Assembly (NCBI GenBank): GCA_976226885.1
Contig: OZ320313.1
Location: forward strand, 71,300,001-71,364,000
DNA: 64,000 nt
Source of the DNA: Iphione sp. A-MEVVRFRX5
Lineage: Eukaryota
Direction: 5' to 3'
Position numbers and translations under genes: made by a program. Positions 7,383 through 12,008 of this stretch are shown one piece after another. Positions within the stretch are counted from its first letter, which is position 1. Every line of letters starts with the position of its first letter. Below the pieces are notes generated by a model. That model was given only the letters and a program-made list of their open reading frames with translations, did no database searches and was not told where the DNA came from.

Positions 7383-7598
7383 TATCACTTAATAAGCAGA
7401 CCCAGATGAATGTTAAATAACGACAACACATACATGAATACAATTGGGCAGATACATTTTAATTCTGAGTAAATAGACATATGGCCTCTTGAGGCTGGTG
7501 TATATGATTGTCTCTGGAGACAGTGATAACCAATGTGTCTATAGAGCATAACGACATAATAATGACACAAATACATTGGAATATGCCTTATAATGCAC
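7383..7598 (-). repeat. Split direct repeat B2 (216 bp), 3' terminus of the Ngaro-type element
   Basis: Matches 7831-8046 with one mismatch found by eye (g7451 vs c7899). Confidence 0.95.
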
Positions 7599-7704
7599 AA
7601 TATAAAGAGAACACAAACCGAAACAATGCAAATCGAATAGAACAAAACAAAATATATCACGGTGTAAGACTAAAGCACAGATACCATTGGGCGGGCGGGT
7701 GCGG

Positions 7705-7830
7705 CAAACAAGACAGCGAATGGTCAAACGGCTAATCTAAATATAGCGCCCAAGGCGCCACAGTAGTACAACAGAGGGCATCGTGGTCTGCAGGCGTAAT
7801 ATCATGCGATCCCCTAGCGGATAGCTTACA
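7705..7830 (-). repeat. Split direct repeat A2 (126 bp)
   Basis: Identical by inspection to 11883-12008 and directly abuts B1. Confidence 0.95.
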
Positions 7831-8046
7831 TATCACTTAATAAGCAGACCCAGATGAATGTTAAATAACGACAACACATACATGAATACAATTGGGCACA
7901 TACATTTTAATTCTGAGTAAATAGACATATGGCCTCTTGAGGCTGGTGTATATGATTGTCTCTGGAGACAGTGATAACCAATGTGTCTATAGAGCATAAC
8001 GACATAATAATGACACAAATACATTGGAATATGCCTTATAATGCAC
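7831..8046 (-). repeat. Split direct repeat B1 (216 bp)
   Basis: Copy of 7383-7598; begins 17 nt after the YR stop codon. Confidence 0.95.
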
Positions 8047-8063
8047 CATAGGCCAAAGGCTTG

Positions 8064-8954: not shown

Positions 8955-9040
8955 GCGTCTGGAGTTCGTTCTGGGGGTGACGGATTGGAACTGCCTGCGG
9001 TGGGCCGAAGTGATCCATGATGATAGGTGAGGGTCTGAAA

Positions 9041-10987
9041 TTAGAATGATGAAATGTGTGTGACGAGGGAGTGTGGGACTGATAATCTCTTAATGTGAGG
9101 GTGATCACTGAGAAAACGCTTAACTATGGCACGATATTTTGTGGCTGTAGGAAGACGAGAAAGAGCATCTGCTATGATCATTCTTTCTCCTGGAAGATGA
9201 GAAAACGCCAGAGATACGTTAAACCGTGCAGCTCTATACCAGACTGCGCGGAGGATCTTGGATAGAAAATAATCTCTGGTTTTTCCTGAAGAGAGTACAG
9301 AAATAGTAGCACTATTATCGCAAATCAGTTCAATTCTTTGGTTACGAGTTTCAGGGGTGATGAAGAGATGGACTGCGACGGCAGTATTGAACGCCTCTAA
9401 TTGTGAAATAGGCAAATGGGACAATTCTTGGGGAATGGATTGAGTGTAAAAGAAATGAGAATTATAGGCGCCCATGCCAACGAGACAGGCGTCACAAAAT
9501 ATTACATCAGTAACAACGGGAGGGGAGATGAGGCGTATCCCGTTAAAATGAGGTAGGAAGGTGAGGAACCAGTTGAGGTCCCTTTTAACAGGGTCCGTGA
9601 GTGAGACTGTTTTAGAGTTGTAACGTGAGGATAGTCTCAATTCATGCAGAAGGGAGTTGATGAAAAATCTTGCTGGAGGAGAACATTTGACTATGTGATT
9701 GATGAGGCCGATAATGCTCTGGGCGGTTCTTAGTGGAACATGAGGTAATGGGAGGATTTGTGATATGGCATCCTGCAAATCTGAAATTTTGGACATGGGT
9801 ATGGACATGGTGCGTTGTCTGGTGTTAAAGGTGACACCTAACCATGTTAGGGTGTGGGTGGGTTGGACACATTTTTCATGAGCTAGCTGGAGACCTAGAT
9901 TGGATATGAATGTCTGAGCGTATGAGAAGGCCAAGGAAAGTTGTGATTTAGAGTCTGAAATGAGCACATAGTCATCTAGGTAAGCATAGGTGGTAACAGA
10001 TGGGTACTTTATAGATATATGGTTGACTATGGCAGAGGATAATTCTTGAAGTAGAAGTGAAGAATATCGAGTTCCGAAGGGGAGGGACAAATCGAGGTAG
10101 AATTGATGATTGTAATTAAATGGAAGCAAGGGCCAGTCGAGAGGGTCGACCGGGAAATATCTATATGCTCGTTTTAGGTCTAGTGAAGCAAGGAATAGAG
10201 TGTTGGTAGAGATAGAGATTATATGAGCGATATCGTGGGGGGAAGGGAGAGAGACCTTGAGTGGATGGGTGAAGTAGTCATTACGAGGGATACCAGCATT
10301 GACCATGGAATGAGAGAGATCGAAAATAACCCTTCTATCTTTGGAATCCTTTTTTGACCTGGTCATGATGGGGTTCAATATTCTGGGGTGATCGAATGGA
10401 TGAGAGTCTAGGGGCCCTCTTATGGCACCTAGAGCAATTTCTGTACAAAGGTACTTTTGGACATGTATATTATCGGCTGCATCTGTTGGGTAGGGATCAA
10501 CACAATCAGGTAGACAATGGTGGGTGTACCCTAAGGGGAAACCATATGTGAGAAAATCGGATAGTATGACGCCCTTGTGTAATAACGGGTTAAGCAATGA
10601 ATACCAATTATACAGATTCAATTGAGAAGGTAAAGCAATTCTGGCCTCCAAGAAATTTGGTAGTGCAGTACTTCTCACACAAGAATATACGTTGGCAAGA
10701 TCTAGAGGGAGAGCAGAAGATGGAGAGGGCCAGTTAAAAATCCTATGGGATATCATTTGGTAATGTGACCTGGAAAGTGAAATATGATCATTAACATCTG
10801 GGAATTGTTCATCAATAACCAGTAGATCGTACTGGTCGGTGCTGGGGTCTGTAGAGTCTGGGGAGATCACCACTCTTGGGCATCTGGGCGCTGTTGGCGC
10901 TGGTCCCTCGGTTGTGTAGACGTCCAGACCTTGGGCTGCTGTCGGTCTTGTAGTAGTTGCTGCTGGGCCCTCTTCTTTGATCTGCAT
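9041..10987 (-). CDS. Reverse transcriptase / RNase H (DIRS-Ngaro type)
   Basis: 648 aa, no stops. RT motifs: RRVIFDLS, SLDLKRAYR, LSLPFG, YLDD, WLG. RNase H motifs: FCDAC, ISQLEAF, ICDNSAT, HLPGERMIIADALSR. Confidence 0.95.
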   Translation of the reverse strand: MQIKEEGPAATTTRPTAAQGLDVYTTEGPAPTAPRCPRVVISPDSTDPSTDQYDLLVIDEQFPDVNDHISLSRSHYQMISHRIFNWPSPSSALPLDLANVYSCVRSTALPNFLEARIALPSQLNLYNWYSLLNPLLHKGVILSDFLTYGFPLGYTHHCLPDCVDPYPTDAADNIHVQKYLCTEIALGAIRGPLDSHPFDHPRILNPIMTRSKKDSKDRRVIFDLSHSMVNAGIPRNDYFTHPLKVSLPSPHDIAHIISISTNTLFLASLDLKRAYRYFPVDPLDWPLLPFNYNHQFYLDLSLPFGTRYSSLLLQELSSAIVNHISIKYPSVTTYAYLDDYVLISDSKSQLSLAFSYAQTFISNLGLQLAHEKCVQPTHTLTWLGVTFNTRQRTMSIPMSKISDLQDAISQILPLPHVPLRTAQSIIGLINHIVKCSPPARFFINSLLHELRLSSRYNSKTVSLTDPVKRDLNWFLTFLPHFNGIRLISPPVVTDVIFCDACLVGMGAYNSHFFYTQSIPQELSHLPISQLEAFNTAVAVHLFITPETRNQRIELICDNSATISVLSSGKTRDYFLSKILRAVWYRAARFNVSLAFSHLPGERMIIADALSRLPTATKYRAIVKRFLSDHPHIKRLSVPHSLVTHISSF

Positions 10988-11856
10988 TGATCCAACTTGT
11001 GCTCGAGCTGTTTATTATGAATTATGAAACAGAATGGACATATGTGAGTGAGAGACACGTCGTTAGCGGTGTGTGGTGGTGTTTCAGTACATTTTCCCCC
11101 AAACCATGCTGGGCAGGGGATAATAGTGTCCTTCTGAACTCCTTGAGCATCACGTGAGGCTCGGATATGAGCATTAATACATCGTTGTTTGATGGACTCT
11201 ATTCTGGCTGTATCGGACCAGGTAAGCCTATCATTGCCTGTAAGGTGCCATATTTCGACTAGCCACTCCCTAACTGGTGTCCAGCCACTTGCCTGGACTT
11301 CTTCGGCAGTGTCCCTTATATGGCTAACTAGAGTGAGAATGTCAGTTGGATAGACGATAGAAGGGTCTAATATCATGCCCATGATAGACGACACGTACTG
11401 GGGAAAAGTGAATTTCCTTAGATCAGGCTTATCAGTGTCTGGCATTACAACGTAGGAAGATGGGCTAGGGTGTGCCATTTTCTTACCTACAGTCTCAAGG
11501 GCAGCCGGATACATGTGGGTAAATATCTCCTGAATTTTCGAGGCTGCCTCTGTCTTCAGGGCTGCTGGTTGAGGTGGTGGTGTAGATTCGTCTGTTGTTT
11601 CGTTGTCATCGGGTGTGCTCGTACCGGCTGTAGAGGTAGAGGTGGAGGGGCTTGTAGCGTCAGCCATTTTGGCCGCCGCGGCACGTGTAGTGACCGTTGG
11701 ATTCGTACTTTTCTTGGACTTCTTGGACCCTTTGGTCTCCTTGGATTCTTGGGGCTCCAGTCTGTCCAAACGTTCCTCAATTGCTTTCATTTTTTCGAGC
11801 ATTTTTATCAACAGGTCGCCTTCCTCCTCTGTGATACCTTTCTCGGGGTCCGGCAT
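10867..11856 (-). CDS. Gag-like ORF1 of the Ngaro-type element
   Basis: 329 aa starting 27 nt after repeat A1, with an S/T/P-rich linker and a C-terminal Cys/His cluster CPAWFGGKC-x5-H-x8-HICPFC-x8-H-x4-C. Overlaps the RT ORF. Confidence 0.85.
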   Translation of the reverse strand: MPDPEKGITEEEGDLLIKMLEKMKAIEERLDRLEPQESKETKGSKKSKKSTNPTVTTRAAAAKMADATSPSTSTSTAGTSTPDDNETTDESTPPPQPAALKTEAASKIQEIFTHMYPAALETVGKKMAHPSPSSYVVMPDTDKPDLRKFTFPQYVSSIMGMILDPSIVYPTDILTLVSHIRDTAEEVQASGWTPVREWLVEIWHLTGNDRLTWSDTARIESIKQRCINAHIRASRDAQGVQKDTIIPCPAWFGGKCTETPPHTANDVSLTHICPFCFIIHNKQLEHKLDQCRSKKRAQQQLLQDRQQPKVWTSTQPRDQRQQRPDAQEW

Positions 11857-11882
11857 AGCTGCTTACACGTCTGACCCGTTCA

Positions 11883-12008
11883 CAAACAAGACAGCGAATG
11901 GTCAAACGGCTAATCTAAATATAGCGCCCAAGGCGCCACAGTAGTACAACAGAGGGCATCGTGGTCTGCAGGCGTAATATCATGCGATCCCCTAGCGGAT
12001 AGCTTACA
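11883..12008 (-). repeat. Split direct repeat A1 (126 bp), 5' terminus of the element
   Basis: Identical to 7705-7830; the element sense strand starts TGTAAG. Confidence 0.95.

What the first reader, a model, noticed from the sequence alone, without database searches (positions are those of the whole stretch)
7383..12008. Apparently intact, very young Ngaro-type tyrosine-recombinase retrotransposon
Seen: all three ORFs are free of stops and frameshifts, the catalytic motifs are intact (YLDD; RNase H D-E-D-D; YR R-HxxR-Y), the A repeats are identical over 126 bp and the B repeats differ at 1 of 216 bp. Established: split direct repeats, a YR integrase and no methyltransferase characterise Ngaro elements, which are thought to integrate through a circular DNA intermediate. 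Inference: a candidate currently mobile, possibly undescribed family; active YR retroelements are rarely characterised experimentally.
Basis: partly seen in the sequence, partly recalled or inferred. Interest (0 to 1): 0.75.

Follow-up and report, generated by a model that had tools for sequence, protein, structure and literature searches.

The report
Intact Ngaro-type tyrosine-recombinase retrotransposon
A complete 4.6-kb jumping gene of the Ngaro type (reverse transcriptase plus a Cre-like recombinase) sits backwards inside an intron of an animal's CBFB gene; it is an ordinary, probably still functional member of a known kind, and its most interesting feature is a conserved pair of splice signals that probably makes its recombinase.

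Summary
A 4,626-nt element lies on the minus strand (window 12008→7383) with the layout A1, ORF1 (gag-like), ORF2 (RT/RNase H), ORF3 (tyrosine recombinase), B1, A2, spacer, B2. All three frames are open. A1 and A2 are identical over 126 nt, and B1 and B2 differ at 1 of 216 nt.

By structure it is Ngaro-type. It has split direct repeats and the gene order gag–RT/RH–YR. It has no methyltransferase, and the same genome's DIRS1-like elements serve as a positive control for that test. Its RT is separated from those elements on a tree. No named Ngaro, PAT or VIPER reference was available.

"Very young, currently mobile" is only partly supported. One difference in 342 nt allows an age from roughly 10,000 years to several million years. 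This lineage is a single copy, and the nearest copies are 91% identical (dS about 0.35). At family level, at least 12 of 30 copies keep all three frames, dN/dS is 0.05–0.10, and there are near-identical sibling pairs. Together these argue for recent activity of the family.

An added point was already made by this scan on other DNA of this genome and was tested independently here. An invariant splice donor in gag and an acceptor just after the ORF2 stop would fuse the Gag N-terminus to the recombinase. No RNA data could be obtained.

The parts
12009..12014 (-). 5' host flank GTGATC. It repeats the last bases of B (GTGATA), so it is microhomology at the crossover, and it holds the AT(N) target trinucleotide.
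   Evidence: In 17 family copies the flank has A at position -3 in 13 of 17 and T at -2 in 14 of 17 (p=1e-4 and 1e-5).
11883..12008 (-). A1, the left split direct repeat (126 nt). It carries a family-conserved TATA-like box (11916-11923) and the motif CATTCGCTG (11892-11900), a putative transcription start near the end of A.
   Evidence: The promoter role is inferred from motif conservation only.
10867..11856 (-). ORF1, gag-like, 329 aa. It has an N-terminal coiled coil, a basic KSKKSKK stretch, a disordered linker, a helical core, and two zinc fingers (C248/C256/H262/H271 and C273/C276/H286/C291).
   Evidence: There is no Pfam hit. dN/dS is 0.05-0.08.
11475..11490 (-). Predicted splice donor inside gag (GTAG|GTAAGA). 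Exon 1 ends at 11487 and the GT is at 11486-11485. It is phase 1 and splits Gly124.
   Evidence: The donor is invariant in 12 of 12 intact copies. It lies in the longest invariant nucleotide run of ORF1, 16 nt against a next-longest of 8. It falls in a low-confidence linker, residues 123-128 of the model.
9035..11486 (-). Predicted 2,452-nt intron. It would remove the gag core, the zinc fingers and all of RT/RNase H.
   Evidence: Inferred. There is no RNA evidence.
9041..11011 (-). ORF2 frame (656 codons, ATG at 10987). The RT core is about 9827-10237 (YLDD at 9971-9982) and RNase H is about 9167-9493. The frame is -1 to ORF1 with a 145-nt overlap. There is no methyltransferase.
9035..9060 (-). 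Predicted splice acceptor: a pyrimidine-rich tract followed by TTTCAG, directly after the ORF2 stop (9041-9043). Exon 2 starts at 9034, phase 1.
   Evidence: CAG|ACCC is invariant in all copies, including L028, which has a 5-nt insertion.
8064..9034 (-). ORF3, a Cre-like tyrosine recombinase. Coding starts at the acceptor (322 full codons), and the first ATG comes only at 8954.
   Evidence: The 27 codons before the ATG have pN/pS 0.22, and copy L028 has Leu in place of that Met.
7831..8046 (-). B1 (216 nt). It holds conserved palindromes, an ATTAAA signal (7906-7911) and the terminal GAGTGATA.
7705..7830 (-). A2 (126 nt), identical to A1. The B1|A2 joint (GTGATA|TGTAAGC) is the copy of the circle junction.
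7599..7704 (-). A 106-nt unique spacer between A2 and B2, with a family-conserved C-rich start.
   Evidence: Its function is unknown.
7383..7598 (-). B2 (216 nt), the right end of the element. ATTAAA lies at 7458-7463.

Best explanation
This is a structurally complete, autonomous Ngaro-type retrotransposon of the DIRS order, which uses a tyrosine recombinase. It belongs to a low-copy but diverse family, with roughly 70-130 copies or fragments in a 1.18-Gb animal genome.

Shown:
- It encodes a zinc-finger Gag-like protein, a Ty3-like RT/RNase H and a Cre-like recombinase, all with their catalytic residues.
- It is bounded by split direct repeats (A1 ... B1-A2-spacer-B2).
- It lies antisense in a 21.6-kb intron of the CBFB orthologue, in unique DNA.
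- All three genes have evolved under strong purifying selection.

Inferred (Goodwin-Poulter model for split-repeat elements):
- An RNA that starts near the end of A1 and ends in B2 is reverse-transcribed.
- The ends are restored from the internal B1|A2 joint into a circle.
- The recombinase crosses the circle's B|A joint (ATA) with an AT(N) trinucleotide in the target. Here the flank shares 5 bases (GTGAT) with the element's end.

Inferred from conservation only: the recombinase is not translated from its own ATG. It comes from a spliced subgenomic mRNA that joins Gag residues 1-123 (coiled coil plus basic stretch) in phase to the recombinase.

The copy inserted recently, but it is the only member of its lineage in the assembly, so present-day mobility of this copy is possible and unproven (about 0.35).
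For: Anatomy and motifs. Folds: the ORF3 profile matches Cre at E=7e-15 and the model matches at TM 0.74. ORF2 matches Ty3 RT/RH at E=9e-27 over profile positions 132-578 of 613.

No methyltransferase: ORF2 gives only RVT_1 at E<=1, while a DIRS1-like pol of the same genome gives RVT_1 plus Dam PF05869 at E=1.3e-7.

Tree: the family is monophyletic (100) inside a group of metagenome elements with the gag-RT/RH-YR order, and a fully supported long branch separates it from the ITR/ICR/MT elements.

Selection: dN/dS is 0.05-0.10 in all three ORFs. Twelve of 30 copies keep three long frames. Sibling pairs L002/L003 and L022/23/24 are about 99-99.5% identical. Split repeats are 96-100% identical in 17 copies.

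Target: there is an AT preference at -3 and -2, matching the trinucleotide idea reported for DIRS (PMC7192593).

Splice:
- The donor is invariant, in phase, and lies in the longest invariant run of ORF1.
- The acceptor is invariant.
- The region before the ATG is coding (pN/pS 0.22), folds as the first helix of the Cre-like N-domain, and aligns to Cre residues 12 onward.
- L028 lacks the Met.
- Five relatives with only about 30% identical recombinase have a phase-1 acceptor 17-19 codons before the AFRPGT motif. Each also has a strong phase-1 donor at the same gag boundary.
Against: This lineage is a singleton, with the next copies at 91%. No named Ngaro reference was in the tree. Donor strength was scored with a weight matrix recalled from memory, which is a heuristic. 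The donor position differs by up to about 19 alignment columns among relatives. Some relatives (L031, L032, L046) also have an upstream in-frame ATG, so splicing may not be obligatory everywhere. How ORF2 is translated is unresolved: there is no conserved ATG and no canonical slippery heptamer. B1 carries the same poly(A) signal as B2, which the model must read through.
Confidence: 0.8

Rival explanations
1. The copy is an old, fixed and now silent insertion. Its split repeats look identical because they are short, or because gene conversion between A1/A2 and B1/B2 keeps them alike. It is intact by chance or by recent inactivation.
For: It is a single copy with no sibling above 91% identity. 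Only 342 nt are compared, so the age range reaches several million years. There is no expression evidence.
Against: All three ORFs (about 3.9 kb of coding sequence) are free of stops, although neutral decay would be expected. The same high repeat identity is seen in 17 copies of diverged lineages. Purifying selection between lineages means the lineages diverged while replicating.
Confidence: 0.2
2. The conserved GT and AG are not splice sites. Instead the recombinase is made from its first ATG (296 aa) or by a -1 frameshift from the end of ORF2. The 16-nt invariant block in gag would then serve another role, such as packaging, priming or protein constraint.
For: There are no RNA data. The ORF3 frame is open 41-64 nt into ORF2 and is always -1 to it. 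11 of 12 copies have the ATG. The literature searched describes the YR ORF only as 'frameshifted or overlapping' (PMC3783388).
Against: There is no slippery heptamer in the overlap. The ORF3-frame sequence upstream of the acceptor is not conserved, while the 27 codons after it are. Those codons form helix A of the Cre-like fold, which a start at the ATG would delete. L028 has no Met there. Acceptor and donor are in matching phase in five distant relatives, whose acceptor lies in non-coding DNA 70-140 nt after the pol stop.
Confidence: 0.25
3. The element belongs to the PAT-like or DIRS1-like group rather than Ngaro.
For: PAT-like and VIPER elements share the A1...B1-A2-B2 repeat layout (PMC6681497), so the repeats alone do not decide.
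Against: There is no Dam-like methyltransferase, with a positive control. ORF2 ends about 35 profile positions after RNase H. There are no inverted terminal repeats. The RT is separated from the genome's ITR/ICR/MT elements by a fully supported long branch. The gene order is not the gag-YR-RT order of VIPER.
Confidence: 0.04

Closest known systems
Ngaro elements (DrNgaro1 of zebrafish; Xenopus DIRS-53_XT/DIRS-54_XT; fungal Ngaro clades)
   Same: They share the split direct repeats A1...B1-A2-B2, the order gag then RT/RH then YR, the lack of methyltransferase, protease and DDE integrase, overlapping frames, and low copy number with potentially active copies (PMC9210276; PMC3783388).
   Different: This element has no fourth ORF with an SGNH hydrolase, which amphibian Ngaro elements have. 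A 106-nt spacer separates A2 from B2. Sequence relatedness to named references was not tested. The predicted gag-YR splice was not found described in the literature I could search.
DIRS1-like elements of the same genome (L104-L106)
   Same: They share the YR retrotransposon order, three ORFs and a Cre/phage-integrase-type recombinase.
   Different: Those elements have inverted terminal repeats plus an internal complementary region, a Dam-like methyltransferase after RNase H, and at least 810 candidate copies. The RTs are far apart on the tree.
PAT-like and VIPER elements
   Same: They share the split direct repeat layout (PMC6681497).
   Different: PAT-like elements carry a methyltransferase. 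VIPER is restricted to kinetoplastids and has the order gag-YR-RT/RH. Neither feature is present here.
Cre recombinase of phage P1
   Same: They share the two-domain fold over about 310 residues (TM 0.74) and the catalytic R-K-H-R-W-Y set.
   Different: Sequence identity is only 12-14%. The target here appears to be a trinucleotide with short homology, not a 34-bp lox site. The protein is encoded by a retroelement.
Subgenomic spliced mRNAs of retroviruses (env and accessory genes)
   Same: In both, a donor early in gag and an acceptor after pol would give a downstream gene its start codon, while unspliced RNA serves as the genome.
   Different: Here the product would be a Gag-N-terminus-recombinase fusion protein. 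The splice is predicted, not shown.

Membership tests
Ngaro (DIRS order) | Encodes a tyrosine recombinase instead of a DDE integrase | tested here: met
   The profile matches Cre at E=7e-15. The model matches Cre at TM 0.74. R151, K189, H266, R269, W292 and Y300 are present. No integrase or protease Pfam hit was found.
Ngaro (DIRS order) | Split direct repeats: A1 at the 5' end and B1, A2, B2 at the 3' end | tested here: met
   The definition comes from PMC9210276 and PMC6681497. As a variation, a 106-nt spacer lies between A2 and B2.
Ngaro (DIRS order) | Gene order gag-like, RT/RNase H, YR | tested here: met
Ngaro (DIRS order) | No methyltransferase domain | tested here: met
   ORF2 gives only RVT_1 at E<=1, and the match to Ty3 RT/RH ends about 35 positions before the ORF end. 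Positive control: the same genome's DIRS1-like pol hits Dam PF05869.
Ngaro (DIRS order) | RT (and YR) group with named Ngaro references in a phylogeny | not testable with these tools
   No DrNgaro, PAT, DIRS1 or VIPER reference sequence is reachable. Partial test: the family nests among unnamed metagenome elements with the Ngaro gene order and is far from the genome's DIRS1-like elements (a quick tree with SH-aLRT support only; the careful search did not finish).
Ngaro (amphibian/fish subgroup) | Extra ORF with SGNH hydrolase after the YR | tested here: not met
   The ORF3 stop is at 8064 and B1 starts at 8046, so there is no room for a fourth ORF. This feature is optional for Ngaro as a whole.
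DIRS1-like | Inverted terminal repeats plus an internal complementary region | tested here: not met
   No inverted repeats were found in 6000-13500. They are present in the control loci L104-L106.
PAT-like | Split direct repeats together with an RT/RH/MT polyprotein | tested here: not met
   The repeats are present but the methyltransferase is absent.
VIPER | Kinetoplastid host and the order gag-YR-RT/RH | tested here: not met
   The host is an animal: its CBFB exon is 80% identical to human. The YR is the last gene.

The most novel reading that the evidence does not exclude
Ngaro retrotransposons make their recombinase from a spliced subgenomic mRNA. A phase-1 donor at the boundary between the Gag N-terminal coiled-coil/basic region and the Gag core joins a phase-1 acceptor just after pol. 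The product is a GagN-recombinase fusion. The arrangement is old enough to be shared by elements whose recombinases are only about 30% identical. It would be a retrovirus-like expression strategy in a recombinase-using retroelement, and it would explain the long-noted 'start-less, frameshifted' YR ORFs.
Probability: 0.6. Interest if true: 0.65.

Novelty: new member of a known kind. Interest (0 to 1): 0.4.

Why it matters
An intact Ngaro copy is not surprising in itself. Such copies are reported in fish, frogs and fungi. Its value is as a clean, complete exemplar in unique DNA, with exact ends, an inferred target (an AT trinucleotide plus 5-nt homology) and many diverged intact relatives for comparison.

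The splice prediction makes one open question directly testable: how the last, often start-less, gene of YR retrotransposons is expressed. A single RT-PCR or long-read RNA experiment would settle it. The same prediction arose independently on other elements of this genome in this scan and was re-derived here from different copies and from metagenome relatives.

The contrast between a low-copy, highly diverse, strongly selected Ngaro family and a very abundant DIRS1-like family in one genome also bears on why Ngaro elements stay rare.

Tried and rejected
- Empty-site search: both 600-nt flanks are unique in the genome, so there is no paralogous empty site.
- Frameshift sites: there is no X_XXY_YYZ heptamer in either overlap.
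- A second acceptor-like TTTCCAG|G before the conserved ORF2 core: rejected. It is out of phase with the donor, is explained by the codons F-S-R-S, and is broken by a synonymous change in L025.
- Intron-less processed copies: none were seen. Exon-1-to-exon-2 distances are 2447-3002 nt where both were scored.
- Spliced-transcript-like metagenome contigs: L036 lacks pol upstream of the YR but has no gag either, so it is not informative.
- Gag fold: the model is of low confidence (pLDDT 59), and the VIA-align search gave only generic helical matches with Z<=5.8. No fold is assigned.
- Protein atlas look-alikes gave only unnamed RT clusters from Mollusca, Basidiomycota and Cnidaria.
- The first related-loci run with A1 failed for lack of a conserved stretch. 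A3 worked.
- The Goodwin & Poulter 2004 paper is not held.
- The joined exon1-exon2 protein was deliberately not built, searched or folded. Each exon was handled by reference on its own.
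Full report
**1. What is there**

The element lies on the minus strand of the window.
- The repeat finder gave two direct-repeat families. Reading the ends trims them to their true extent.
- A is 126 nt: A1 at 11883-12008 and A2 at 7705-7830, identical.
- B is 216 nt: B1 at 7831-8046 and B2 at 7383-7598, with one mismatch (7899 versus 7451).
- Read 5'→3' on the minus strand, the order is A1, a 26-nt leader, ORF1, ORF2, ORF3, B1, A2, a 106-nt spacer and B2.
- This is the A1...B1-A2-B2 "split direct repeat" layout that the literature gives for Ngaro, PAT-like and VIPER elements (PMC6681497; PMC9210276).
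- No inverted repeats were found.

**2. The three genes**

ORF1 (10867-11856, 329 aa):
- It has no Pfam hit.
- It aligns with the first ORF of distant relatives. The invariant Cys/His residues form two zinc fingers: C248/C256/H262/H271 and C273/C276/H286/C291.
- Its model is of low confidence (pLDDT 59). It shows an N-terminal helix (10-33), a disordered stretch, a helix (97-121), a break at 123-128, and then a helical core.
- A structure search gave only generic helical matches.

ORF2 (ATG at 10987, stop at 9041-9043; stop-to-stop 656 codons):
- It hits RVT_1 at E=2.7e-16.
- As a profile with 20 homologues it matches Ty3 RT/RNase H (4ol8) at E=9e-27 over profile positions 132-578 of 613.
- YLDD (336-339) and the RNase H residues D499, E531, D557 and D607 are present.

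ORF3:
- Alone it hits Phage_integrase only weakly (E=0.007).
- A 50-sequence profile matches Cre at E=7e-15 in both domains.
- The AlphaFold model (pLDDT 92.4) superposes on Cre over about 310 columns at TM 0.74.
- R151, K189, H266, R269, W292 and Y300 are all in place.

**3. Class**

- The repeats do not separate Ngaro from PAT-like or VIPER elements, so I tested the other criteria.
- The gene order is gag, RT/RH, YR.
- ORF2 ends just after RNase H and shows no Dam-like domain at E<=1.
- The same genome holds at least 810 candidate Dam-like (PF05869) matches in ~696-aa ORFs.
- Three of these that I fetched have inverted terminal repeats, an internal complementary region, and the ORF set gag, RT/RH/MT, YR.
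- The pol of one of them scores RVT_1 plus Dam (E=1.3e-7) in the same scan in which the element's ORF2 scores RVT_1 only. The absence of a methyltransferase is therefore a real negative.
- A quick maximum-likelihood RT tree (SH-aLRT support only, the careful search did not finish) makes the family monophyletic (100). It nests among metagenome elements that also have the order gag, RT/RH, YR. The DIRS1-like/MT elements fall across a long, fully supported branch.
- Named Ngaro, PAT, DIRS1 or VIPER references could not be obtained, so that part of the membership test remains open.
- There is no room for the SGNH-hydrolase ORF seen in amphibian Ngaro elements.

**4. Family and age**

- The window's genome (1.18 Gb, 89 contigs) holds this copy once.
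- The next best copies are 91% identical (L002 and L003), then 86%, 78-81%, and a large group at 71-74%.
- First-look candidate numbers were 68-352 depending on the probe. These counts are lower bounds.
- Twelve of the 30 fetched copies keep three long frames.
- Between L001 and L002/L003, dS is 0.31-0.39 and dN is 0.02-0.035. Against the other lineages dS is saturated and dN/dS is 0.05-0.10 in all three ORFs. The lineages therefore diverged as replicating elements, not as decaying copies.
- L002/L003 and L022/L023/L024 are near-identical sibling sets.
- Split repeats are 96-100% identical in 17 copies of all lineages.
- For this copy, one difference in 342 nt gives K=0.003, with a 95% range of 7e-5 to 0.016. 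For assumed rates of 1-5e-9 per site per year, that is about 0.3-1.5 My, with limits from under 0.01 to about 8 My.
- "Recent" is fair. "Very young" and "currently mobile" are not established.
- This copy is a singleton in unique flanks, which leaves its source copy unexplained.

**5. Ends and target**

- In all 17 copies with both ends, B ends in ...GTGATA (L028...GTAATA) and A starts with TGT(A/G/T)AGC or, in L005 and L008, TGTTGGC. The internal B1|A2 joint reads GTGATA|TGT..., which is the image of the circle junction.
- The host base at -3 is A in 13 of 17 copies and the base at -2 is T in 14 of 17 (p=1e-4 and 1e-5).
- Each element is thus flanked by AT(N) on the left and carries ATA on the right. 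This matches the pattern of "one trinucleotide from the element, one from the target" discussed for DIRS elements (PMC7192593).
- In this copy the left flank reads GTGATC, sharing five bases with the end of B. That is what a homology-guided tyrosine-recombinase crossover would leave.
- Integration through a double-stranded circle is inferred. For DIRS-1, experiments found mainly linear single-stranded cDNA, and the circle junction could not be amplified (PMC7192593).

**6. How the recombinase is probably made**

Notes from this scan on other pieces of the same genome proposed a spliced Gag-recombinase message in Ngaro and DIRS elements. I tested this idea on this family independently.
- (a) Directly after the ORF2 stop, every copy has a pyrimidine-rich run ending in CAG followed by ACCC. 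This holds even in L028, which has a 5-nt insertion there.
- (b) The 27 codons between that AG and the first ATG of ORF3 are conserved as protein, with synonymous changes (pN/pS 0.22). In L028 the "start" Met is Leu.
- (c) These residues are homologous to the N-terminus of other recombinases. They fold as the first helix of the model (pLDDT 84-88) and align to Cre from residue 12. A protein started at the ATG would lack part of the DNA-binding domain.
- (d) Scanning all GTs conserved in at least 11 of 12 copies, only one scores as a good donor: GTAG|GTAAGA inside gag, identical in all 12. Its phase (one base of a Gly codon left in exon 1) is the phase the acceptor needs, and the joined codon would read GAC.
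- (e) That donor lies in the longest fully invariant nucleotide run of ORF1: 16 nt against 8 for the next longest. Only 18% of third codon positions are invariant.
- (f) It falls in the low-confidence linker (residues 123-128) between the N-terminal part and the Gag core.
- (g) Five metagenome relatives with the same gene order have recombinases only about 30% identical. Each has a pyrimidine tract plus YAG, in phase 1, 17-19 codons before the AFRPGT motif, lying in otherwise non-coding DNA after pol. Each also has a strong phase-1 donor at the same Gag boundary, at columns 248-267 of alignment A4.
- The host's own CBFB exons use GTAAG donors and Y-tract AG acceptors.

The predicted intron is 9035-11486 (2,452 nt). 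The product would be Gag residues 1-123 (coiled coil, KSKKSKK basic stretch, linker) plus the 322-residue recombinase.

I did not build, search or fold the joined sequence. Each exon was used by reference only. The donor score uses a weight matrix recalled from memory and is a heuristic. No RNA evidence could be obtained. I found no paper describing such splicing in Ngaro elements in the searchable library. The original Ngaro paper is not held.

**7. What remains open**

- ORF2 is always -1 to ORF1 with a 145-nt overlap. It has no conserved ATG (the first conserved Met is M78) and no canonical slippery heptamer. A Gag-Pol frameshift is the likeliest route, but its site is unknown.
- Conserved non-coding motifs suggest several signals: a promoter in A (a TATA-like box and CATTCGCTG near its end), a poly(A) signal ATTAAA in B, two palindromes in B, and a C-rich start of the spacer. 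Their roles are inferred or unknown.
- B1 carries the same poly(A) signal as B2.
- No intron-less copy was seen among the scored copies. This is weak evidence.

**8. Surroundings**

- The element sits antisense in the ~21.6-kb intron between CBFB-orthologue exons at C1:71291861-71292028 and window 13633-13767.
- The exon is 80% identical to human CBFB, so the host is an animal outside the mammals. Its name is not known to me.

**9. Verdict**

The element is a new member of a known kind (Ngaro), complete and probably competent. Its family shows signs of recent activity, but activity of this copy is unproven. The splice-based expression of the recombinase is the part worth an experiment. The scan had already raised it on other DNA of this genome, and this report adds an independent family and metagenome relatives.

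Noticed in passing
window 1-13632, exons at 13633-13767 (+) and 14556-14657 (+): The element lies antisense inside a ~21.6-kb intron of the CBFB (core-binding factor beta) orthologue. The upstream exons are at C1:71290620-71292028, outside the window. The exon is 80% identical to human CBFB.
   Followed up: partly
L012 (G000:C4:24801597-24808903), locus 1373-1503 and 6105-6235: A family copy is flanked on both sides by the same 131-nt host sequence (2 mismatches). Both of its borders resemble the element's ATA|TGT joint. This is either a very long target duplication or an insertion into a tandem repeat.
   Followed up: partly
L010 (G000:C1:179023119-179030426) 3' end; L013 (G000:C4:5214072-5221363) 5' end: L010 carries the unit B-A-spacer twice in tandem at its 3' end. 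L013 has a 379-nt tandem duplication that includes A at its 5' end. These could arise from multimeric intermediates or from unequal recombination.
   Followed up: no
metagenome loci L047, L066, L093: Related elements occur head to tail on single contigs: YR followed by gag, or two YR/pol sets 5-7 kb apart. This suggests tandem arrays or assembled circles.
   Followed up: no
G000 genome-wide; examples L104-L106: There is a very abundant DIRS1-like family (at least 810 Dam-like methyltransferase candidates). Many copies have intact ~696-701-aa RT/RH/MT ORFs, inverted terminal repeats and an internal complementary region. This contrasts with the low-copy Ngaro family.
   Followed up: partly
window 36034-36810 (-): A 258-aa ORF has an RVT_1 match (E=1.8e-11). 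It is an unrelated reverse-transcriptase fragment.
   Followed up: no
window 7831-8046 and 7383-7598 (B), 7684-7704 (spacer start): Family-conserved palindromes CTGTCTCYAGAGACA and CCTCAAGAGG lie in B, and a C-rich motif lies right after A2. They are candidate recombinase-binding or priming sites.
   Followed up: no
window 13786 onward: A run of N (gap or masked) starts just after the CBFB exon's donor.
   Followed up: no
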